Origin: Dendrobates tinctorius | Lineage: Eukaryota | Assembly: GCF_039654945.1 (NCBI RefSeq) | Contig: NW_027361677.1 | Location: forward strand, 13,454,001 to 13,518,000 | DNA: 64,000 nucleotides | Reading direction: 5' to 3' | Part shown: positions 1,883-64,000 of the stretch, in pieces | Layout of the letters: the number at the start of each line of letters is the position of its first letter | How positions within the stretch are numbered: position 1 is the stretch's first letter | Made by a program: the position numbers and the translations under genes | The notes under the pieces: generated by a model | The model's input: only the letters and a program-made list of their open reading frames with translations | Told to the model about the DNA's origin: nothing | Databases searched by the model: none

Positions 1883-2016
1883 GTGTAGACCAACACCTAA
1901 TAGTGACTAACTAAACTAATATCTCTTGTTTTATTATTATGAACATTGGTTAGATATGTTTGTAATACTCTCCAAAATAGATGTCTCCAATTTAAGTGCA
2001 ATTCTAGACACAGTAC

Positions 2017-2270
2017 CTTATGGGACTTGAGATCGAATCGGGGTCTCGAGCGGTCACCTGGCCAATAACACCATTGATGGCAGCATTTTCATGAACTTCC
2101 AGAAGATAAGTAGGTGATGAAAACACCGGTGGCTCGTCTGCATCCTCCACTGTAACTTTGACTGTTGCGGTATCTTTGAAGGGGACCCCACTGATGAAAT
2201 GTGGATCAATATGAGTATTGACGGCTTCTACCTTCAGTATATAGGATTTTTTGCTCTCGAAGTCCAAAGG
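2017..2270 (-). CDS. CDH8: Type II cadherin coding exon (EC3/EC4), 254 bp
   Basis: Translates to PLDFESKKSYILKVEAVNTHIDPHFISGVPFKDTATVKVTVEDADEPPVFSSPTYLLEVHENAAINGVIGQVTARDPDSISSPIR. The segment PPVFSSPTYLLEVHENAA...VIGQVTARDPD matches CDH8 as I recall it rather than CDH11. AG at 2271-2272, GT at 2015-2016; 254-bp size is conserved. Confidence 0.93.
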
Positions 2271-4019
2271 CTGTTAAGAATGACAAAGATAAATGTCTCT
2301 TACTAATGACCACAGAGGCAAGAACAAATGAATTTAATGCTGATGGATGAAAGCTATGTTCATTTAAGCACATTGACTGAGTTTTAATGCAACCACAGTA
2401 TCGGCCATGTGCTTGCTCGGACCGAGCCTGTAAATTGTGCCGGCATTTATTGATATCTGTTTACGTTGCCTCCAAAGAAGTCAATCTTTTTTGTTCCCCA
2501 TCCTCTTTGCCTTTCTCTCTTGAGCTGGATATTGCAGAATGTTCTTAGTCTGCGGTTCGAGAGTTAGAATTGTCGCAACAGATAGACAGTAAAACTTTAT
2601 CAGTGATTACTCTACCGGCACATTGCTAAAATTCCTAATCAGTGACTCGCCAGTAAAAAATAATAAACGAGGTGATTTCTAATACAGCCTCGAGGTGCTA
2701 TAAATATTTTAGTATTTCTTAGACAATGCATAAAATACAAGGGAATACGTGAAGCCGCGGTAGTATTATGCATGGCAATAAGCCTTTATCTAGCACGTGC
2801 ATTATTTTTTAACACTTGAGCACTTTTTTTGTTTATTACTCCCTTAAAATCAATTTTAACGATAGCATTACTTGTGGGTTTCATCGTTTCTGCATTTTTA
2901 CAAGGAAATTCCAAAAATGCGTCGCTCAACGTTCTGACCGGATAGTGTAACATTGGTAGGTAGTAATGTCAACTTTTGCCTTCTATCGTTCTCTTTTCAC
3001 TTTAAACAGTTTTGCAAGTACATTTTATTTCCTTCCTTTTTTTAGTATCTACAGCTAATCTGTAGAAAACAGCTGATATCAGAAACAAGTGGAATTAAAA
3101 GTAGCTAATGGCATGTGCGCAGTTTAATGAGAAATGTCAATCTCTCATCAGCTGTCGCAATTTGACTCAAATCTTCTAATTTAGGAGGTTGACTCTGTCA
3201 AGAAAGTTTGCTTCAAAAATAGAAACATACTTGTTACATTTCGAAAAGACGTAGACAGGACAACGTATCAATCACCCTCCATCTCCATATGGCGACGGGG
3301 ATGGAAGTTGGCGCTATAACGTGAGCGACAAACTTACAGTAAATTAAGCATTGGCTCAAAACATGCAAATGGCTCCTTTTCATAGAATTTGATTTTAAAA
3401 ACTCTTTTGGAATTTCATAATATGAGAAAATTTTTGAAAGTTTCACTAAATTTTTCATGTTGTACTAAAATTGTAATGGCTGTAGAGTTGAAAAAACATG
3501 GTTGTGGAGACATTAGCAAAGTATTTGGCATCTTATTACTTTAGTCTCAGGCTTTATTCAGATGTCTGAATTTTGCACATGAGTGCTGTCCGTGATATAT
3601 GTGATATTCTATGGAGCCATTCATATGTCCAATTTTTGCCTGGGACTGAGAGATCATTGGAAAATATCGAAGACATGTCCGATTTTGGTATGTGGGACAG
3701 ATCAAAATCGGCGGTACAAGACAATGGATGCGTGAAAAAAATCGGGCTGCGCTGGGATGACAACCAAGTGTGGTCGAATTTCCATGGACTGTCCGAATGG
3801 AAAAATTGGAGAATTTGTTTTTTTTTCAATTCTCCATGAACAAGAAACTAGGATGACACTCGTACAACTCTGATCAGAGACAGATCAGAATATTCGGGAA
3901 GATTTTCTCATACGTGAAAAATATTGGATGTGTAATTGACATCTAAGAGCTTGTTTTCACTGGGGGCATGTACTTCTCTCTGTATGAGTTGCTAACCGAC
4001 AGCACCTTCTTGGACTTAA

Positions 4020-5425: not shown

Positions 5426-5429
5426 TTAA

Positions 5430-8400
5430 CCCCTTCACTACCAAGGGTGGTTTGCACGTTAACTACCGGGCCAATTTTTACAATTCTGACCACTGTCCCT
5501 TTATGAGGTCATAACTCTGGAACGCTTCCATGGATCCCGGTGATTCTGACATTGTTTTCTCGTGACATATTGTACTTCATGATAGTGGTAAAATTGCATT
5601 CAAATAACTTGCGTTTATTTGTGAAAAAAACGGAAATTTGGCAAAAATTTTGAAAATTTCGCAATTTTCCAACTTTGAATTTTTATGCCCTTAAATCACA
5701 GCGATACGGCACACAAAAAACTTAATACATAACATTTCCCACATGTTTACTTTACATGAGCACAATTTTGGAACCAAAATTTTTTTTTGTTAGGAAGTTA
5801 TAAGTGTTAAAAATTGACCAGCGATTTCTCATTTTTGCAACACCATTTTATTTTTAGGGACCACTTCACATTTGAAGCCACTTTGAGGGGTCTATATGAT
5901 AGAAAATACCCAAAAGTGACACCATTCTAAAAAATGCACCCCTTAAGGTGCTTAAAACCACATTCAAGAAGTTTATTAACCCTTTAGGTGCGTCACAGGA
6001 ATTTTTTGAATATTAAAAAAAAAAATGAACATTTAACTTTTTTTCACAAAAAAAATACTTCAGGTTCAATTTTCTTTATTTTACCAAGGGTAACAGGAGA
6101 AATTGGACTGCAAAAATTATTGTGCAATTTGTCCTGAGTACGCTGATACCTGATATGTGGGGGGGAACCACTGTTTCGGCGCATGGCAGACCTCAGTAGG
6201 GAAGGAGCGCCGTTTGACTTTTTCAATGCAAAATTGGCTGGAATTCAGATCGGACGCCATGCCGCGTTTGGAGAGCCCCTGATGTACCTAAACACTAGAA
6301 ACCCCCCACAAATGACACCATTTTGGAAACTAGACCCCCCAAGGAACTTATCTAGATGTGTGGTGAGCACTTTGAACCCCCCAGTGCTTCACTGAAGTTT
6401 ATAACGTACAGCAGTACAATTAAAAAATCATATTTTTTCCACAAAAATGATCTTTTCACCCTCAATTCTTATTTTTCCAAAAGTAACAGGACCATAAAAG
6501 ATATTGTGCAATTTATCCTGAGTACGCTGATACCCCACATGTGGGGGTAAACCACTATTTGGGTGTATGGCAGAGCTCGGAAGGGAAGCAGCACCATTTG
6601 ACGTTTTTGGCTGGAATTGAGATCGGACACCATGTCGCGTTAGGAAAGCCCCTGATGTACCAAAACAGTAGAAACCCCCCACAAATGACACCATTTTGGA
6701 AACTAGACCCCCCAAGGAACTTATCTAGATGTGTGGTGAGCACTTTGAACCCCCCAGTGCTTCACTGAAGTTTATAACGTCCGGGCGTGAAAATAAAAAA
6801 ATCGTATTTTTTCTACAAACATGATCAATTAGTCCCCAATTTTTTTATTTTCCCAAGGGTAACAGGAGAAATTGGACCCCATAAGTTGTTGTCCAATTTG
6901 TCCTGAGTACGCTGATACCTCATATGTGGGAGAAAACTACTGTATGGGCACACATCAGGGCTCGGAAGGGAAGTAGTGACGTTTTGGAATGCAGACTTTG
7001 ATGGCATGGTCTGCGGGTGTCATGTTGCTTTTGGAGAGCCCCTGATGTACCTAAACAGTGGAAACTCCCCACAAGTGACCCCATTTTGGAAACTAGACCC
7101 CCTAATGAACTTATCTAGATGTGTGGTGAGCACTTTGAACCCCCCAGTGCTTCACAGAAGTTTATAACGACCGGGCGTGAAAATAAAAATATCGTATTTT
7201 TTCAACAAACATCATAATTTAGTCCCCAATTTTTTTATTTTCCCAAGGGTAACAGGAGAAATTGGACCCCATAAGTTGTTGTCCAATTTGTCCTGAGTAC
7301 GCTGATACCTCATATGTGGGAGAAAACTACTGTATGGGCACACGTCGGGGCTCGGAAGGGAAGTAGTGACGTTTTGGAATGCAGACTTTGATGGATTGGT
7401 CTGCGGGTGTCATGTGCGTTTGGAGAGCCCCTGATGTACCTAAACTATTGAAACTCCCCACAAGTGACCCCATTTTGGAAACTAGACCCCCCACGGAGCT
7501 TATCTAGATGTGTGGAGAGCACTTTGAACCCCCAAGTGCTTCACAGAAGTTTATAACGCCTGGGCGTGAAAATAAAAAAAACATTTTTTTCCGCAAAATT
7601 ATATTTTTGCCCCCAATTTTTTATTTTCCTAAGGGTAACAGGAGAAATTGGACCCCAAAAGTTGTTTTGTAATTTGTCCTGAGTAGGCTGATACCCTACA
7701 TGTGGGGGTAAAACACTGTTTGGGCGCACGGCAGAGCTTGGAAGGGAAGGAGCACCATTTGACTTTTTCAACGCAGAATTGGCTGGAACTGAGATCAGAC
7801 GCCATGTTGCCTTTGGAGAGCACCTGATGTGCCCAAACAGTGGAAACCCCCCAATTATAACTCCAACCCTAACCCTAACACACCCCTAACCCTAATCTGA
7901 GCCCTAGCCCTAACCCTAGCCCTAACCCTAGCCCTAACCCTACCCTAACCCTAACCCTAGCGGGAAAATGTAAATAAATACATTTTCTTTTAGTTTTATT
8001 ATTTTTCCCTAACTAAGGGGGTGATAACGGGGGGTTTGATTTACTATTTATGGCGGTTTTTATGTTTGTCGGCTGTCATACGCTAAAAGACGCTTTTTAT
8101 TGTAAAAGTAGTTTTTGCATCACCACATATTGAGAGCTATAATTTTTCCGTATTTTGACCCACCGAGTCATGTGAGGTCTTATTTTTTGTGGGACGAGTT
8201 GACGTTTTTATTGGTACCATTTTCGGGCACGTGACATTTTTTGATCGCTTTTTATTCCGATTTTTGGGACGCAGAATGAACAAAAACCAGCATTTCATTA
8301 ATTTCTTTTGGGGGGGTGCGTTTACACCGTTCCGCGTGCGGTAAAATTGATAAAGCGGTTTTATTCTTCGGGTCAGTACGGTTACAGCGATACCTCATTT

Positions 8401-9431
8401 AGGTCGTTTTTTTATGTTTTGTCAGTTTTTTGCAATGAAAACCATTTTATATAAAAAATAATTATTTTTGTATCGCTTTATTCTGCGAGCTATAACTTTT
8501 TTATTTTTTTGCGGATGATGCTGTATGGTGGCTCGTTTTTTGCGGGACAAGATGACGTTTTCAGCGGTACCATGGATATTTATATGTGTCTTTTTGATCG
8601 CGCGTTATTGCACTTTTTGTTCGGTGGTATGATAATAAATCATTATTTTTTGCTTCGTTTTTTATTTTTATTTTTTAAGGGGTTCGCTAAAGGGGTTAAC
8701 TAATGGGACAGTTTTATAGGGCAGGTCATTACGGACGCGGCGATACCAAATATGTGTACTTTTATTGTTTTTGGGTTTTTTTATTTTGAAAAAATGGATT
8801 TATTGGGGAATATTTTTTTTTTTTTTACTAATTTATTTAGCGATTTTTTTTTATTATTTTTAACACTTTTTTTTTTTTTTTTTTTTACTTTATTACCTTG
8901 TCCCAGGTGGGACATCACTGTCCTGTGACAGATCACTGATCTGTCACATCACAGATCACTGTGACAGATCAGCGATCTGTCACAGGCACTGCTGCAGACT
9001 TCCTCATGCCTGCGCTTTGCAGGCACTGAGGAAGCCAGCTTCCTCAGGCCCCCGAAGACCCCCGTCGCCATCTTGGATTCGGGGGCCTGGAGGAAAGGAG
9101 CCCCCCGCAGCAGCGCTGCACATTGCGCTGCCGTGGGGGGCTCAGGGAAGCACGGAGGGAGCCCCCTCCCTGCCGATGCTTCCCTTTAACCCCCGGTACA
9201 CCGCGATCGCGTTTGATCGCGGTGTGCAAGGGGTTAACGTATCAGGGGCGGTCCGTGACCGCCCCTGACACATTGTGCCGGGTGTCAGCTATGATAATTA
9301 GCTGACACCCGGCCGCGATCAGCGGCGCTCACCACGTGGGCGCCGCTGATCATGGTGACGTAATATTCCGTCCATGGTAATTAGGTCCATGGTCACATGG
9401 ACGGAATATTACGTCAATTGTAGGCAAGGGG
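5430..9431 (+). mobile_element. Non-autonomous piggyBac-like element, copy A (4.0 kb)
   Basis: TTAA at 5426-5429 and 9432-9435. Imperfect TIR CCCCTTCACTACCAA / reverse complement CCCCTTGCCTACAAT. Internal ~370-390-bp tandem units (4 copies of CCATTTTGGAAACTAGACCCC). No transposase ORF. Confidence 0.85.
7865..7960 (-). repeat. Interstitial telomere-like tract (CCCTAA/CCCTAG)n inside copy A
   Basis: Direct reading: AACCCTAACCCTAA...CCCTAGCCCTAACCCTAGCCCTAACCCTAG. Confidence 0.9.
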
Positions 9432-9444
9432 TTAATTATATTAA

Positions 9445-9985
9445 CCCCTTACCTACAAAGGACGTAATATTCCGTCCATGTGACCATGGACCTAACTACC
9501 ATGGATGGAATATTATGTCCCAGCGATCAGCGGCGCCCACGTGGTGAGCGCCGCTGATCGCGGCTGGGTGTCAGCTAATTATCATAGCTGACACCCGGCA
9601 CAATGTGTCAGGGGCGGTCATGGACCGCCCCCGACACGTTAACCCCTTGCACACCGCGATCAAACGCGATCGCGGTGTACCGGGGGTTAAAGGGAAGCAT
9701 CGGCAGGGAGGGGGCTCCCTCCGTGCTTCCCTGAGCCCCCCACGGCAGCGCAATGTGCAGCGCTGCCGCGGGGGACTCCTTTCCTCCTGGCCCCCGAATC
9801 CAAGATGGCGACGGGGGCCTTTGGGGGCCTGCAGGAAGCTGGCTTCCTCAGTGCCTGCAAAGCGCAGGCATGAGGAAGCCTTCTGCAGTGCCTGTGTCAG
9901 ATCGCTGATCTGTCACAGTGATCTGTGATGTGACAGATCAGCGATCTGTCACAGGACAGTGATGTCCCACCTGGGACAAGGTAAT

Positions 9986-10016
<31 letters not shown>

Positions 10017-13000
10017 TGTTAAAAATAATTTTAAAAAAATCGCTAAATAAATTAGTAAAAAAAAAAAAAAATATTCCCCAATAAATCCATTTTTTCAAAA
10101 TAAAAAAACCCAAAAACAATAAAAGTACACATATTTGGTATCGCCGCATCCGTAATGACCTGCCCTATAAAAATGTCCCATTAGTTAACCCCTTTAGCGA
10201 ACCCCTTAAAAAATAAAAATAAAAAACTAAGCAAAAAATAATGATTTATTATCATACCACCGAACAAAAAGTGCAATAACGCGCGATCAAAAAGACGCAT
10301 ATAAATATCCATGGTACCGCTGAAAACGTCATCTTGTCCCGCAAAAAACGAGCTGCCATACAGCATCATCCGCAAAAAAATAAAAAAGTTATAGCTCGCA
10401 GAATAAAGCGATACAAAAATAATCATTTTTTATATAAAATTGTTTTCATTGCAAAAAACCGACAAAACATAAAAAAAGACCTAAATGAGGTATCGCTGTA
10501 ACCGTACTGACCCGAAGAATAAAACCGCTTTATCAGTTTTATTGCACGCGGAACGGTGTAAACGCACCCCCCCAAAAGAAATTCATGAAACGCTGATTTT
10601 TGTTCATTCTGCATCACAAAAATCGAAATAATAAGCAATCAAAAAATGTCACGTGCCCGAAAATGGTACCAATAAAAACGTCAACTCGTCCCGCAAAAAA
10701 TAAGACCTCACATGACTTGGTGGGTCAAAATATGGAAATATTATAGCTCGCAATATGTGGTGATGCAAAAACTATTTTTACAATAAAAAGCGTCTTTTAG
10801 CGTGCGACAGCCGCCAAACATAAAAACCGCCATAAATCGTAAATCAAACCCCCCGTTATCACCCCCTTAGTTAGGGAAAAATAATAAAACTAAAAGAAAA
10901 TGTATTTATTTCCATTTTCCCGCTAGGGTTAGGGCTAGGGTTAGGGTTAGGGCTAGGGTTAGGGTTAGGGCTAGGGCTCAGATTAGGGTTAGGGGTGTGT
11001 TGAGGTTAGGGTTGGAGTTATAATTGGGGGGTTTCCACTGTTTGGGCACATCAGGTGCTCTCCAAAGGCAACATGGCGTCTGATCTCAATTCCAGCCAAT
11101 TCTGCGTTGAAAAAGTCAAATGGTGCTCCTTCCCTTCCAAGCTCTGCCATGCGCCCAAACAGTGTTTTACCCCCACATGTAGGGTATCAGCCTACTCAGG
11201 ACAAATTACAAAACAACTTTTGGGGTCCAATTTCTCCTGTTACCCTTAGGAAAATAAAAAATTGGGGGCAAAAATATAATTTTGCGGAAAAAAATGTTTT
11301 TTTTATTTTCACGCCCAGGCGTTATAAACTTCTGTGAAGCACTTGGGGGTTCAAAGTGCTCTCCACACATCTAGATAAGCTCCGTGGGGGGTCTAGTTTC
11401 CAAAATGGGGTCACTTGTGGGGAGTTTCAATAGTTTAGGTACATCAGGGGCTCTCCAAACGCACATGACACCCGCAGACCAATCCATCAAAGTCTGCATT
11501 CCAAAACGTCACTACTTCCCTTCCGAGCCCCGACGTGTGCCCATACAGTAGTTTTCTCCCACATATGAGGTATCAGCGTACTCAGGACAAATTGGACAAC
11601 AACTTTTGGGGTCCAATTTCTCTGTTACCCTTGGGAAAATAAAAAAATTGGGGACTAATTGATCATGTTTGTGGAAAAAATACAATTTTTTTATTTTCAT
11701 GCCTGGGCATTATAAACTTCTGTGAAGCCCTTGGGGGTTCAAAGTGCTCACCACACATCTAGATAAGTTCCTCAGGGGGTCTAGTTTCCAAAATGGGATC
11801 ATTTGTGGGGGGTTTCCACTGTTTAGGTACATTAGGGGCTCTCCAAAGGCAACATGACACCCACAGACCATTCCATCAAAGTCTGCATTCCAAAACGTCA
11901 CTACTTCCCTTCCGAGCCCCGACGTGTCCCCATACAGTAGTTTTCTCCCACATATGGGGTGTCAGCGTACTCAGGATAAATTGGACAACAACTTTTGGGG
12001 TCCAATTTCTCCTGTTACCCTTGGGAAAATAAAAAAATGGGGACTAAAAGATGATGTTTGTGGAAAAAATACGATTTTTTTATTTTCACGCCCGGACGTT
12101 ATAAACTTCAGTGAAGCACTGGGGGGTTCAAAGTGCTCACCACACATCTAGATAAGTTCCTTGGGGGGTCTAGTTTCCAAAATGGTGTCATTTGTGGGGG
12201 GTTTCTACTGTTTTGGTACATCAGGGGCTTTCCTAAAGCGACATGGTGTCCGATCTCAATTCCAGCCAAAAACGTCAAATGGCGCTGCTTCCCTTCCGAG
12301 CTCTGCCATGCGCCCAAATAGTGGTTTACACCCACATGTGGGGTATCAGCGTACTCAGGATAAATTGCACAATATCTTTTAGGGTCATGTTACTTTTGGA
12401 AAAATAAGTATTGAGGGTGAAAAGATCATTTTTGTGGAAAAAATATGATTTTTTAATTGTACTGCTGTACGTTATAAACTTCTGTGAAGCCCTTGGGGGT
12501 TCAAAGTTCTCACCACACATCTAGATAAGTTCCTTGGGGGGTCTAGATTCCAAAATGTTGTCATTTGTGGGGGGTTTCCACTGTTTTGGTACATCAGGGG
12601 TTTTCCAATCGCGACATGGTGTCCGATCTCAAATCTAGCCAAAAACGTCAAATGGCGCTGCTTCCCTTCCGAGCTGTGCTATGCGCCCAAATAGTCATTT
12701 ACACCCACATATGGGGTATCAGCGTACTGAGGACAAATTGCACAATAACTTTTAAGGTCCTGTTACCCTTGGAAAAATAAAAATTGGGGGTGAAAAGATC
12801 ATTTTTGTGGAAAAAATATGATTTTTTAATTGTACCGCTGTACGTTATAAACTTCTGTGAAGCCCTTGTGGGTTCAAAGTTCTCACCACATATCTAGATA
12901 AGTTCCTTGGGGGGTCTAGTTTCCAAAATGGGGTCAGTTGGGGGGTTTCCACTGTTTAGGTATATCAGGGGCTCTCCAAACGTGACATGGCGTCCGATCT

Positions 13001-13815
13001 GAATTCCAGCCAATTTTGCATTGAAAAAGTCAAACGGCGCTCCTTCCCTACTTAGGTCTGCCATGCGCCGAAACAGTGGTTCCCCCCCCACATATCAGGT
13101 ATCAGCGTACTCAGGACAAATTGCACAATAACTTTTGCAGTCCAATTTCTCCTGTTACCCTTGGTAAAATAAAGAAAATTGAACCTGAATTATTTTTTTT
13201 GTGAAGAAAAGTTAAATGTTCATTTTTTTTAATATTCAAAAAATTCCTGTGACACACCTAAAGGGTTAATAAACTTCTTGAATGTGGTTTTAAGCATCTT
13301 AAGGGGTGCAGTTTTTAGAATGGTGTCACTTTTGGGTATTTTCTATCATATAGACCCCTCAAAGTGGCTTCAAATGTGAAGTGGTCCCTAAAAATAAAAT
13401 GGTGTTGCAAAAATGAGAAATCGCTGGTCAATTTTTAACCCTTATAACTTCCTAACAAAAAAAAATTTTGGTTCCAAAATTGTGCTAATGTAAAGTAAAC
13501 ATGTGGGAAATGTTATGTATTAAGTTTTTTGTGTGCCGTATCACTGTGATTTAAGGGCATAAAAATTCAAAGTTGGAAAATGGCGAAATTTTCAAAATTT
13601 TCACCAAATTTCTGTTTTTTTCACAAATAAACGCAAGTTATTTGAATGCAATTTTACCACTAACATGAAGTACAATATGTCACGAGAAAACAATGTCAGA
13701 ATCACCGTGATCCATGGAAGCGTTCCAGAGTTATGACCTCATAAAGGTACAGTGGTCAGAATTGTAAAAATTGGCCCGGGAGTTAACGTGCAAACCACCC
13801 TTGGTAGTGAAGGGG
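9445..13815 (-). mobile_element. Non-autonomous piggyBac-like element, copy B (4.4 kb), inverted relative to copy A
   Basis: TTAA at 9441-9444 and 13816-13819. It is the reverse complement of copy A with scattered substitutions and one extra internal tandem unit (5 versus 4). Confidence 0.85.
10923..11013 (+). repeat. Interstitial telomere-like tract (TTAGGG/CTAGGG)n inside copy B
   Basis: Nine contiguous hexamers at 10923-10976 plus degenerate units. Confidence 0.9.
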
Positions 13816-14139
13816 TTAATTGGAATTGCATAATGTTCTGTATCCTCTGTGATAACATTTTAAGAGAATTTCACATGTGCCATCTTGTAAAAAGCCGATC
13901 ACAGTTTATTGTATGGTCTTCATTCTAGACAATGAGTCTATTCGAGGAATTAGCAGTGGCATTTTCAATGTTGTGGTCGGGATGGATGCTTTAGCCCTTG
14001 CAGCAATTATTTCCTTGTGCTGTACTTAAATAAATACGTTGAGGTCAAGGTACAAGTAATGTGGAGCCTTGGGCAGCAGCGTTACATTGTATCCTCTGTC
14101 TTCCTCATCCTCTTACAGTCAATAGTTACTTGCCTCTTA

Positions 14140-38145: not shown

Positions 38146-39362
38146 TTAGGAAGTAGCTCAAGGGCTCTCTTCCAATGGCCACAGATTACCGACCTGGCTG
38201 CTGGCCCAGATCCTGCAAATCAACTTGCACCATCTCTAGTTTACATATATATTGGGAGAGATATCTTGAAATTTTATTTTTTTAAACCTGTTCATCTTGC
38301 GTCTCACATCTTAGGGAGTCACACACTGGGCCCAAAGGTGAAGGGGGCCCACCGAAGCCAGCCAGCGCATATTTCAACTGTATGTGTGTCCTGCTGGGTC
38401 CTGTACGACAATACATGCTGCCAGCTAATCGGAGGCTAGCAGCTGATGTCAGCATGCAAGACACTGGCTGCGCATGGAAGTAATGTAATGCGCTGCCTGT
38501 CACTTGCACGCTGAAGTAAGCTAATGACTTCTGCGCCGACTGCAGAAGAGGACACCACTCTTCGTGGGAATGTAACCATGCGCGTGGGATATATATCAGA
38601 ATGAGGGACATGTATACCAGGGTGTGTCCAGGAAGAAGGACATATATACCTGAAAGGGACCTGTGGTGGAGGACATATTTACAATGGGATGAGCCCAGGA
38701 TGAAAGTCAAATATACCAAGATGGGGACATATATACAAGGAAAGGGCCCAGGGTGGAGGACATATATACCAGGATGTGGGACATTTTAACATGAAGGGGT
38801 TCAGGATGATGGATATATATACCAAGATGAAGGATTTATACAATGATGTTCCCAGGATGGAGGACATACAAACCTGGAAGGATCCATTACTACATAAAGG
38901 TTGAGCAGGAGCAACACATACATCCTTACAGGATTTAAAATGCTACAAGAGCCCATACATCTTACCAAAATGCAGGGGTAATCCAGTTCAAATTTTGAAC
39001 CAGGGCCCATCAGACTCTAGTTATGCCAGTGATCTTGGGATATATTAAACCAAGCAGAACGATAAGAAAGGACACATCACTATTATGCTTATCCAGATCG
39101 CCATGGACTCCTCAAGCTTAATGGGCCACTGCTTTGGTCTTGCCTAACCAACCTGTTGCTAATGTTGGCCCACTTAGGTTAAATTTATTAGAACTTTGGG
39201 TTTCATTATCCAAAATCATAAGACCTTGAAAAGTACATTTGGTGATAATTTATTATTACCGTATGTTTATTACATTCAACTCGTAATTAAAAAAATATGT
39301 ATATACTTGAGATTCACCATAAATATTTTATCTGTATATAATAATGTTTATAGACACGCTAC

Positions 39363-39550
39363 CTTTCGTAGGCGGAGGACACCATCCTGCGTCTGGGAGT
39401 CTGTCGTGATTTCAAACATGTCCCTCCCATCACCATCAATTATGTCAAATGACGATTTAGCATTGTCTCCAATGTCTCGGTCGTTTGCCCTCACTCTTCC
39501 AACTGGATCACCAATAGCAATGTCTTCTGGGATTGCAAACTGATACTGAC
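39363..39550 (-). CDS. CDH8: Type II cadherin coding exon (first part of EC3), 188 bp; not called in the ORF track
   Basis: Manual translation gives (S)QYQFAIPEDIAIGDPVGRVRANDRDIGDNAKSSFDIIDGDGRDMFEITTDSQTQDGVLRLRK. AG at 39551-39552 and GT at 39361-39362. Phase is compatible with both neighbouring exons and the 188-bp size is conserved in type II cadherins. Confidence 0.93.
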
Positions 39551-40199
39551 CTTACAAAGAAGGGAGAGAAAACATTACAATTAAAGTTAATGCAATCAGT
39601 TCCTCACATTAGCTCTGCCTCTAATTAATGGAGCTTCTCAAACGTGAGTTTTAACCTACTGAGATAAATTGGATCAGAGGTGAAATTATTGAACGCATTA
39701 AATGGCCCTCAACCATTTCTGATAAGAGGAGGACCATTTTCTATGAAAACCAGGCTGCTGCTGAAATCAGATGGAGAGCTGGGACCAGGCGAAAGTGTGA
39801 AAAAATAGCAGTACAGTCTTAGTAAGAAAAGAAAGCTCAGACAGTCGAGCAGATTAAAAATTGCTGGAGTTCCAAGCTGGGCGAAAAATACTGAGATCAA
39901 GCGAGCTGGGCATGAGCTGCTAATTGTCAGCGCCATGTATAGTGCAAGCGGCCAAGTTTAGAGGCTAAACATAATTACCAGAAAGACTGCTGATTGTTTT
40001 GCTGAGTAGCAAATCATTTGAGTTAATCCATGATGGGGAATAACCACAGGAGGAACATGGCAAGCAAGAAATGACATATTGCTGACCCACTATTTCACTG
40101 CTTGCTTATGTTTAAAGTTTGAGCATCGTAACCACCAACAGCCAAAAGGATGGCGTTAGGGGCAGGCAAACTAAGCATTTGCCTAGGGCCCCACTCCCC

Positions 40200-62184: not shown

Positions 62185-62947
62185 CATATACTATTGAATT
62201 GCACAAATATATCAAATCTCTATTTCATCTGCACAAACTTCAGTGCCGAGTACTTTCACTTTATTGGGCGTACTCAGACAGGCGTATTTCTGGTTCGAGG
62301 ATGGCATCGCAATCCTTGGACTGGCCGTCGGCCATCCTAAGCTGAGCGTAAGATCTGCATAGAAATTTATGCTGCCACGCTCACGTCAGGAAAGCCAACG
62401 GCCAGTCCGAGGATTGCGATGTGATCTTCATGTGAGTAATACGCCTGTCTGAGTGCGCCCTTATATTGTGGACCCTTACTCGTGCACCACTGTAACACAG
62501 AGTGATGTATACTATTGATGACACTCACAGGCATACTCTGACCCGTGGACAGCACTCTAAAGAGAAGAGTAAGCTGACCAGATACAACAGTTTGTTGGAA
62601 AAGATTCAATATAACTTGTATTTCATGAATTCATATGGTGTTTACATACGTATAAGTCCAGTGGATGGTCACATTCACACAGAACTGTCAGTCAATGAGT
62701 AGGACCGCCCACTGGACCCATAGGCATGCAACAAAAAAGATTTCAAAGAATAAAATGCAAGTTTTACGTAAACCTTTTCTACAAAAATATATATCACAGT
62801 CTGTATTAAAAAAATATTAACAGTCTATAATTGGTAACTCTTTTGACCAGATTGTCTAAAATGGAAAACCCCTTGAAGAACATTAATAAACCAGGAATTT
62901 AAAAAAAGTCATTAATCGGAAAGCACTAGAAAATAAGCTGCACTTAC

Positions 62948-63115
62948 TCATTGCAAACTTTGGAGGATTATCATTGACGTCAGTCAGGGTGACTGTTACG
63001 GTAGTAGTTCCAGAAAGTCCACCCATGTGACCACCCATGTCCTTGGCTTGAATGACAACAAGGTATTCTTCTCTGGCTTCTCTGTCCATGTTGGAAAGGG
63101 CTGTCTTTATGATTG
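62948..63115 (-). CDS. CDH8: Type II cadherin coding exon (end of EC2), 168 bp; most 5' exon in the window
   Basis: Translates to (A)[55 protein letters not shown] with the cadherin DRE and DVNDNPP motifs. AG acceptor at 63116-63117 after a pyrimidine tract, GTAAGT donor starting at 62947. The 168-bp size matches the conserved type II cadherin exon. Confidence 0.93.
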
Positions 63116-64000
63116 CTAGGAGAAGGAGGAAAAAAAGTGAAAGTTTGAGCAATGTTATAGAAATTTCTTGGCTTTAGTCCTAGTGTCCTGTTTATGAAAA
63201 CTTTCAACGAGCAAGAAAGTAAAACCCAGTGGGGCAGATTTATGAATACTGGTCTAAATTCAGACAGCAAAAACTTCAGTGGCACAAGATGTGTGATAAA
63301 TCTGGTATCTTATTAGATATGCTATGTCACTGCTTGGCTGGCTTAATTTACACCAGTTTTGTGCACCTAAATAATGGCATACACCATTATTAAGTCTACC
63401 GCATTTTACGACTCCACTTAGTCATGAATTCTTTTTAGACTCTTACCAAACTTTCCACTAACTTATAAAAAGGGCTAAAACGCATAATAAATATGGTGCA
63501 CAGCATTCATGTCAGTTTTGCTTACTTTGAGACTGTTTTTTGACACATTTTGGTTACATATCTTCTTTAATATTTCTAGTTTGAAACAGAAAATATGCAT
63601 TTCATAGATTTCTGTACCATTGAGATTTATGATACATTCCTAGATTCCTTGTTTTCCGCAACAGCAATCTATAAAATGTACTGCAATGAAATATAGCAAT
63701 ATACTAAATGTGATATAAACACACACACACACACATACATATATAATGTGCCCTACCTATCCAGATTCAACACAAATTGGCTGCTGCATTCCTTTCTTCT
63801 GCTTTTATACAGGCTATGCTTGTCACTCCTGATTGGCTGTGCTGTACTATATTTTGCTCAACAAAAGAAACAGCGGACGGCACTGCTGTTACCATACTTG
63901 TGCTAGTGGTCTGTGGCTGGCAGGAAAGTTACACCGAATCTCCCGGGTGCTTGACCTCGTAGTAATCAATCTTGTATTCTATGTAGATGAAAGGTCGCAC

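What the first reader, a model, noticed from the sequence alone, without database searches (positions are those of the whole stretch)
5426..13819. 8.4-kb near-perfect palindrome formed by two inverted 4-kb piggyBac-like elements only 13 bp apart
Seen: 5430-9431 and 9445-13815 are reverse complements (about 3 mismatches in the first ~120 bp checked), joined by TTAA-TTATA-TTAA. Each has its own TTAA pair, so the empty site reconstructs as ACTCT-TTAA-TTATA-TTAA-TTGG. The copies differ by substitutions and by one internal ~370-bp unit, which argues for two insertions (local hopping or homing) rather than an assembly fold-back. Established: long closely spaced inverted repeats are unstable and depleted in genomes. 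Inference: in the cadherin pre-mRNA this would fold into ~4 kb of dsRNA (possible ADAR or Dicer substrate), and in DNA it could be a cruciform/fragile site.
Basis: partly seen in the sequence, partly recalled or inferred. Interest (0 to 1): 0.75.

Follow-up and report, generated by a model that had tools for sequence, protein, structure and literature searches.

The report
Inverted transposon pair forms long palindrome
Two copies of an abundant non-coding, TTAA-inserting (piggyBac-type) frog transposon sit tail to tail, 5 bases apart, in a cadherin intron; together they make an imperfect (96.6% matching) 8.4-kb palindrome whose origin looks ordinary but which is unusually long and tight.

Summary
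Element A (5426-9435) and element B (9441-13819, inverted) are complete copies of one non-coding family. Each is bounded by TTAA, and the inner TTAAs are separated by TTATA. The arms match at 96.6% (136 substitutions, 10 small indels, one 371-bp satellite unit), so "near-perfect" overstates it.

The substitution pattern, the unique non-matching flanks and the absence of Ns argue against a fold-back or haplotype artefact.

The best reading is two separate integrations into neighbouring TTAAs. The palindrome stops exactly at the outer TTAAs, which rules out a break-and-copy inverted duplication. A 636-bp stretch with only 3 differences suggests copying between the arms.

Local hopping or homing is not shown. 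13% of TTAAs in this window have a second TTAA within 13 bp, and earlier unchecked notes from this scan call the family very abundant, so chance adjacency is plausible.

The pair lies in a minus-strand cadherin intron and folds into a continuous hairpin in silico. Editing, small RNAs and fragility are untested.

The scan has noted this family on other DNA of this genome, and this same stretch twice.

The parts
5426..5429 (.). Outer left TTAA (target-site copy of element A)
   Evidence: Read directly. The flank before it is unique in the window.
5430..9431 (+). Element A, a 4002-bp non-autonomous piggyBac-type element. Its outer end begins CCCCTTCACTACC and its inner end finishes GTAGGCAAGGGG.
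   Evidence: No ORF exceeds 95 aa and the ORFs have no Pfam hit.
6067..7853 (+). Satellite array inside A, ~380-390-bp unit, 4.6 copies
   Evidence: Tandem Repeats Finder and monomer identity matrix.
7273..7728 (+). 456-bp stretch of A identical to B 11150-11605. It lies in a 636-bp region (7220-7855) with only 3 differences between the arms.
   Evidence: The expected longest identical run is ~134 bp; the chance of a 456-bp run is about 6e-6.
7865..7959 (+). Degenerate (AACCCT)n telomere-like tract in A
8900..9431 (+). GC-rich (about 62%) chain of about ten local hairpins at the inner end of A; its mirror is in B at about 9445-9976.
   Evidence: DNA fold -211.6 kcal/mol, z -24; composition profile.
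9432..9444 (.). Centre: TTAA-TTATA-TTAA. The palindrome leaves a 3-nt TAT at 9437-9439.
   Evidence: (pair I8)
9445..13815 (-). Element B, 4371 bp, the same family in inverted orientation
10924..11013 (+). Degenerate (TAGGGT)n telomere-like tract in B
11025..13179 (-). Satellite array inside B, 5.6 copies. The extra unit B2 is at about 12416-12790 by monomer register; the global alignment puts the gap at about 12587-12957.
   Evidence: B2 is 87-90% identical to its neighbours, so it is not a fresh duplication.
13816..13819 (.). Outer right TTAA
   Evidence: The flank after it is unique and is not complementary to the left flank.
2007..2273 (-). Open frame holding a cadherin-domain exon downstream of the pair in gene orientation
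   Evidence: Pfam PF00028, E 7.7e-07; among solved structures it also matches cadherin-8 (E 3.3e-22), the top hit being CELSR1.
39351..39551 (-). Open frame holding a cadherin-domain exon upstream of the pair in gene orientation
   Evidence: Pfam PF00028, E 2.4e-09

Best explanation
Two copies of one non-autonomous, TTAA-specific (piggyBac-type) transposon family integrated in two separate events. They went into two TTAA sites 5 bp apart in an AT-rich spot of a cadherin intron, in opposite orientation with their hairpin-rich 'right' ends facing each other. The two copies most likely already differed when the second arrived, so the locus was never a perfect palindrome. Since then the arms have decayed like ordinary vertebrate DNA, their satellite arrays have changed unit number or content, and at least one stretch has probably been copied from one arm to the other. 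The structure does no known job. It is a passive 8.4-kb quasi-palindrome that is predicted to form a long intramolecular duplex in the pre-mRNA and to be a hairpin or cruciform risk during replication. Shown: anatomy, divergence pattern, intron position, folding potential. Inferred: order and independence of the insertions, gene conversion, RNA and DNA consequences.
For: There are four intact TTAAs and four complete ends. The self-complementarity stops exactly at the outer TTAAs, and the flanks are unique and not complementary to each other. This is what transposase-made junctions give and what break-and-copy mechanisms do not. The differences between the arms look like germline decay, not read error: 136 substitutions against 10 small indels, 77 transitions and 59 transversions, 34 CpG-type transitions, and CpG observed/expected of 0.70-0.75. 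The window holds no Ns. Monomers pair up in order between the arms (A1=B1 95.9%, A2=B3 96.7%, A3=B4 92.3%, A4=B5 99.7%, A5=B6 99.2%), and the extra unit B2 is old, at 87-90% to its neighbours. TTAA occurs 5.9 times per kb here and 13% of TTAAs have a second one within 4-13 bp, so a double target is commonplace. The element has no coding capacity and matches no known RNA family. Yeast data show that tight inverted repeats lose much of their fragility with a few percent divergence (PMC10164571). That favours survival of a pair that started out diverged.
Against: No other family copy could be fetched. It is therefore untested whether the arms are each other's closest relatives, which would point to a local hop, or whether other copies carry the same centre, which would point to a composite. 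The chance expectation depends on a copy number I could not measure. Under uniform TTAA targeting, about N squared times d divided by G adjacent pairs are expected. Taking d = 13 bp and a genome of several Gb, N would have to be about 1e5 before a few such pairs are expected genome-wide.
Confidence: 0.55

Rival explanations
1. Local hop or homing. One copy, for example after replication, was excised from the sister chromatid and reinserted in the next TTAA, or it was drawn to transposase bound at the resident right end. The arms were identical at birth and have since diverged by 3.4%.
For: The arms share the same order of diverged satellite monomers. They are 96.6% alike overall, with a 636-bp stretch at 99.5%. 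An earlier, unchecked first-reader note (s1-382974) reports another same-family insertion 28 bp inside a right end elsewhere in this genome. The inner ends carry a dense hairpin cluster with a 20-nt palindromic motif that could bind transposase.
Against: piggyBac shows only weak local hopping in experiments (PMC3064801; mixed results in PMC6169391). A perfect 8-kb palindrome with a 3-nt centre would be in the most fragile class (PMC10164571), yet the centre is fully intact with both ends and both TTAAs. Divergence is very uneven, from 0.5% to 7.7% per monomer. No enrichment test was possible.
Confidence: 0.2
2. Single insertion of a composite. The two copies became adjacent elsewhere, and the whole 8.4 kb then moved as one foldback-like unit using its two identical outer ends. 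The central TTAA-TTATA-TTAA would be carried cargo, and the empty site here would be ACTCT-TTAA-TTGG.
For: The outer boundaries are a correct TTAA pair around two proper ends. Nothing in the window distinguishes this from two insertions. In unrelated metagenome contigs, a small element with the same 22-nt end occurs as a dimer with a related spacer in two contigs, so dimers of such elements can be repeated units.
Against: Both outer ends are the same ('left') end. For the Trichoplusia ni piggyBac, a left/left pair is inactive for excision and integration with the native transposase (PMC7351741). No second copy of the composite was seen, but only 64 kb could be searched.
Confidence: 0.1
3. Assembly artefact: a fold-back chimeric read, or a false join of two haplotypes that each carry one insertion.
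For: Palindromic chimeras are a known long-read artefact, and no reads could be examined.
Against: The arms differ by 136 substitutions with a CpG-decay signature and by a whole satellite unit, and indels are few. The junction is an exact transposon-end/TTAA structure, not an arbitrary break. The two flanks are different unique sequences that continue the same intron. The window holds no Ns.
Confidence: 0.07
4. Inverted duplication of a single insertion by hairpin-capped break repair or replication template switching.
For: Such mechanisms do make large palindromes with short centres (PMC7999016).
Against: The duplication would have to start and stop exactly at the transposon's TTAAs on both sides. 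Here the flanks beyond the outer TTAAs are not complementary, and the centre keeps two full ends.
Confidence: 0.03

Closest known systems
Non-autonomous piggyBac-superfamily elements (for example human MER85/MER75 and frog TxpB-related elements; recalled from my own knowledge, with general features from PMC5381638)
   Same: TTAA target copies at every end, short imperfect terminal inverted repeats that start with CCC and end with GGG, unlike subterminal regions at the two ends, and no transposase gene.
   Different: About 4 kb long, with cargo: a ~380-bp satellite array, a telomere-like tract and a 530-bp hairpin cluster. The partner transposase was not identified here.
Closely spaced inverted Alu pairs (fragile in yeast, depleted in the human genome; main ADAR substrates in introns)
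   Same: Two copies of one mobile-element family in inverted orientation within the critical spacer range (12 bp or less) and identity range (94% or more), inside an intron (PMC10164571 for the fragility parameters; the ADAR role is from my own knowledge).
   Different: The arms are about 4 kb instead of 0.3 kb. The copies are DNA transposons with exact TTAA junctions. No breakage, editing or depletion was measured here.
Maize 'double Ds' and Drosophila Foldback elements (own knowledge)
   Same: Transposon-derived structures with long inverted arms that can break chromosomes or move as a unit.
   Different: Double Ds is one copy inserted inside another. Foldback arms are built of internal repeats and belong to one element. 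Here two complete elements lie side by side, and mobility of the pair is unproven and disfavoured by its like outer ends.
Arm-to-arm gene conversion in large palindromes (for example the human Y-chromosome palindromes P1-P8; PMC7999016)
   Same: A long stretch (456 bp identical, 636 bp with 3 differences) far less diverged than the rest of the arms.
   Different: Here most of the arm is not homogenised (3.4% divergence overall), so any conversion is sporadic. A mosaic origin of the two copies is an alternative.

Membership tests
piggyBac superfamily (non-autonomous member) | Integration at TTAA with TTAA duplicated at both ends | tested here: met
   All four junctions read TTAA. Because TTAA is obligatory, the duplication cannot be told from chance flanks.
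piggyBac superfamily (non-autonomous member) | Short terminal inverted repeats starting with C (typically CCC...GGG), with unlike subterminal repeats at the two ends | tested here: met
   The ends begin CCCCTT[C/G][A/C]CTAC[C/A]A, matching at 11 of 14 positions between left and right. The right end has a 20-nt palindromic motif pair that the left end lacks. Criteria are from PMC5381638.
piggyBac superfamily (non-autonomous member) | DDD (RNase H-like) piggyBac transposase encoded or supplied in trans | tested here: not met
   No ORF over 107 aa, and no Pfam hit on eight ORFs. The element is therefore non-autonomous. A partner is only suggested by unchecked earlier notes of intact piggyBac copies in this genome.
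piggyBac superfamily (non-autonomous member) | Mobilisation and precise excision by a piggyBac transposase | not testable with these tools
   This needs an excision assay or empty orthologous sites. No related genomes were reachable.
Fragile long inverted repeat (Alu-IR class) | Arms of hundreds of bp or more, a spacer of about 12 bp or less, and arm identity of about 94% or more | tested here: met
   4-kb arms, a 3-nt unpaired centre (13 bp between element bodies) and 96.6% identity. Thresholds are from PMC10164571.
Fragile long inverted repeat (Alu-IR class) | Observed breakage, deletion or rearrangement at the centre | tested here: not met
   The centre is intact, with both ends and both TTAAs complete. 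Population or somatic data are not available.
Intronic inverted-repeat dsRNA (ADAR or Dicer substrate) | Both arms lie in one transcript and can pair | tested here: met
   Cadherin exons on the minus strand lie on both sides. The central 797 nt folds as one hairpin, -871.8 kcal/mol, z -67.
Intronic inverted-repeat dsRNA (ADAR or Dicer substrate) | A-to-I editing or small RNAs from the arms | not testable with these tools
Composite or foldback-type mobile unit | Further genomic copies of the whole pair with the same centre | not testable with these tools
   Only this window could be searched: no other copy. The public collections searched hold no copies of this frog's 4-kb element or flank.

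The most novel reading that the evidence does not exclude
The family's hairpin-rich right end makes the adjoining TTAA a preferred landing site for further copies, either through easily unpaired or bent target DNA or through transposase held on the resident end. If so, tail-to-tail and near-end self-insertions would be systematically enriched, and this frog genome would tolerate kilobase-scale, almost spacerless palindromes for long periods. Alternatively, the palindromic pair is itself a mobile foldback-like unit.
Probability: 0.15. Interest if true: 0.6.

Novelty: new member of a known kind. Interest (0 to 1): 0.35.

Why it matters
Kilobase inverted repeats with a spacer of a few bases are among the most break-prone DNA motifs in yeast, bacteria and mouse transgenes, and short versions are depleted from the human genome. 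A natural 2 x 4-kb example at 96.6% identity, with an intact centre, in a transcribed vertebrate intron has three uses. It is a test case for how a giant, transposon-laden genome tolerates such structures. It allows a check for arm-to-arm gene conversion outside sex chromosomes. It also allows a test of whether very long intronic duplexes are edited or diced. In itself the locus is explained by ordinary transposition and changes no current view.

Tried and rejected

2. Other family copies through spurious ORF products. The 107-aa ORF in the element and a 125-aa ORF 240 bp right of the pair found nothing in the protein collection. No other frog contigs, and no orthologous empty site, were reachable.

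3. DNA pattern scans.
- The left end in metagenome contigs gave 8 contigs that share only the terminal 22-25 nt, as part of a ~105-bp TTAA-flanked miniature element. They show no other likeness to the window and come from a different eukaryote with an intact LINE ORF2. They are useless as an outgroup.
- A 26-nt right-end motif found nothing in viral or prokaryotic genome contigs.

4. Paralogous empty site. The flanks are unique in the window.

5. Known RNA families and protein domains in the element: none.

6. Rejected mechanisms.
- End-joining of two excised elements would leave a single TTAA, not TTAA-TTATA-TTAA.
- A break-induced inverted duplication would not stop at the outer TTAAs.
- A false haplotype duplication would be direct, not inverted, would duplicate the flanks, and usually carries a gap.
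Full report
**Observation**

The window has no Ns. The inverted-repeat search returns a co-linear series of inverted matches across the whole of 5426-13819. Reading the three junctions gives this layout:
- left flank ...ACTCT
- TTAA 5426-5429
- element A body 5430-9431
- TTAA 9432-9435
- TTATA 9436-9440
- TTAA 9441-9444
- element B body 9445-13815, in reverse orientation
- TTAA 13816-13819
- right flank TTGG...

The self-complementarity runs one base past each inner TTAA, so only TAT is unpaired at the centre (pair I8).

A global alignment of A with the reverse complement of B has 3999 aligned columns, 136 mismatches (96.6% identity), 10 indels of 1-5 bp and one 371-bp gap. Both end motifs occur only at these places in the 64 kb, with 0 expected by chance.

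"Near-perfect" is an overstatement.

**Anatomy of one element**

From the outer to the inner end, each element has:
- a short imperfect terminal repeat, CCCCTT..CTAC.A, matching at 11 of 14 positions between the two ends;
- about 640 bp of AT-rich unique sequence;
- a satellite array with a 373-390-bp unit, 4.6 copies in A and 5.6 in B, whose units are only 78-92% alike within an arm;
- a degenerate telomere-type hexamer tract of about 16 units;
- about 950 bp of AT-rich sequence;
- a 530-bp, about 62% GC chain of about ten local hairpins ending at the inner terminal repeat. This chain includes a pair of 20-nt palindromic motifs next to the end.

No ORF exceeds 107 aa. Eight ORFs have no Pfam match, and no Rfam family matches.

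TTAA at all ends, CCC...GGG termini and unlike subterminal regions are the piggyBac hallmarks (PMC5381638). The missing transposase makes this a non-autonomous member. Earlier notes of this scan, which I did not check, describe the same modular family as very abundant in this poison-frog-like genome and report intact piggyBac copies elsewhere in it.

**Real or artefact**

The indirect evidence is nevertheless strong:
- The arms differ mainly by substitutions (136, against 10 small indels).
- Transitions and transversions number 77 and 59, and 34 differences are CpG-type transitions.
- CpG observed/expected is 0.70-0.75, the signature of methylated germline DNA rather than read error.
- The arms differ by a whole satellite unit that is itself old, at 87-90% to its neighbours.
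- The centre is an exact transposon-end/TTAA structure, not an arbitrary break.
- The two flanks are different, unique sequences.

A fold-back chimera or a false haplotype duplication does not predict any of these. I put an artefact at about 7%.

**How it arose**

The palindrome ends exactly at the outer TTAAs, and the sequences beyond them are not complementary. That excludes hairpin-capped break repair or template-switch duplication of a single insertion. The centre is not a single TTAA, which excludes ligation of two excised elements. Transposase-made junctions remain. They allow three readings:
- (a) two independent integrations into neighbouring TTAAs;
- (b) a local hop or homing event that made two initially identical arms;
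- (c) one integration of a pre-formed composite using its two outer ends.

It changes the predicted empty site to ACTCT-TTAA-TTGG. It is disfavoured by analogy: the native Trichoplusia ni piggyBac transposase cannot mobilise a left/left end pair (PMC7351741). It cannot be excluded from 64 kb.

Between (a) and (b), four points bear on the choice:
- Double TTAA targets are common here (5.9 TTAA per kb; 13% have a second one within 4-13 bp).
- piggyBac shows weak local hopping (PMC3064801).
- A perfect 8-kb palindrome with a 3-nt centre would sit in the most fragile class. In yeast, going from 100% to 94% identity cuts rearrangements about 15-fold, and widening the spacer from 12 to 20 bp cuts inverted-repeat-induced recombination about 40-fold (PMC10164571). 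Yet this centre is completely intact.
- Divergence between matching monomers ranges from 0.3% to 7.7%.

I therefore favour (a), with copies that already differed at the time of the second insertion. The preference is moderate.

Under uniform TTAA use, about N squared times d divided by G adjacent pairs are expected. With d = 13 bp and a genome of several Gb (my assumption), that is about 0.2 pairs for 1e4 copies and about 20 for 1e5 copies. Chance therefore suffices only if the family is truly very abundant, and I could not measure the copy number.

**Exchange between and within arms**

The longest identical run is 456 bp (7273-7728 = 11150-11605), against about 134 bp expected; the probability is about 6e-6. 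The surrounding 636 bp (monomers A4/A5 = B5/B6) holds 3 differences where about 22 are expected. Copying from arm to arm after juxtaposition is the simplest explanation. A mosaic ancestry of the two source copies is the alternative.

In contrast, A3 and B4 are only 92.3% alike. At 20 of their 31 differences A3 agrees with the neighbouring A4, against 7 for B4. This points to non-clocklike change inside the arrays.

**Setting and predicted consequences**

Open frames with Pfam cadherin-domain matches lie on the minus strand at 62886-63173 (below Pfam's gathering score), 39351-39551 and 2007-2273. Among solved structures the last one also matches cadherin-8, although the top hit is CELSR1. I searched the exons one at a time by reference and made no joined model. 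The pair therefore lies in an intron of about 37 kb and would be transcribed as one RNA.

The central 797 nt folds into a single near-continuous hairpin of -871.8 kcal/mol, against -330 kcal/mol for shuffled sequences (z -67). As DNA, the central 201 nt gives -103 kcal/mol (z -27). Local hairpins in each inner end offer a competing fold.

Editing, dicing, effects on splicing and DNA fragility are predictions only.

**Comparison and novelty**

The locus behaves like the well-known class of closely spaced inverted mobile-element pairs, such as inverted Alu pairs, and its arms belong to a known superfamily. The unusual features are the arm length, the 3-nt centre, the intact junctions and the hint of arm-to-arm conversion. 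I rate it a new member of a known kind and of moderate interest.

This scan noted the family before on other DNA of this genome, and noted this very stretch twice.

Noticed in passing
window 7865-7959 and 10924-11013: Because the two elements are inverted, their telomere-type hexamer tracts read CCCTAA-like on the left and TTAGGG-like on the right of a 3.1-kb core, so the G-rich strand points outward on both sides. This is a by-product of the inversion, and another first-stage note (s1-362370) covers it.
   Followed up: partly
window 8900-9431 (mirror at about 9445-9976): The inner 530 bp of each element is a GC-rich chain of about ten near-perfect local hairpins (DNA fold z -24). It includes a pair of 20-nt palindromic motifs next to the terminal repeat, which is a candidate transposase-binding region.
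   Followed up: partly
L001-L008 (metagenome contigs OFHQ01009270.1, OFER01014532.1, OFEN01000181.1 and others): A ~105-bp TTAA-flanked miniature element in unrelated eukaryotic DNA shares the exact 22-25-nt outer end of the frog element and nothing else. In L002 (914-1130) and L004 (437-659) it occurs as a direct dimer with a related 13-17-bp spacer. L007 also carries an intact LINE ORF2 (endonuclease plus reverse transcriptase, 933 aa). The source organism is unknown.
   Followed up: partly
window 6926-7175 versus 11700-11950 (monomers A3/B4): This matching monomer pair is only 92.3% alike, and the differences are lopsided (20 against 7 when a neighbouring monomer is used as reference). This suggests exchange within the array in one arm.
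   Followed up: partly
I did not examine it.
   Followed up: no
window 9412-9464: The two inner terminal repeats differ at 3 of their first 20 bases. The version in B is closer to the outer-end sequence (14 of 18 positions) than the version in A (12 of 18). Which is ancestral cannot be told without other copies.
   Followed up: no
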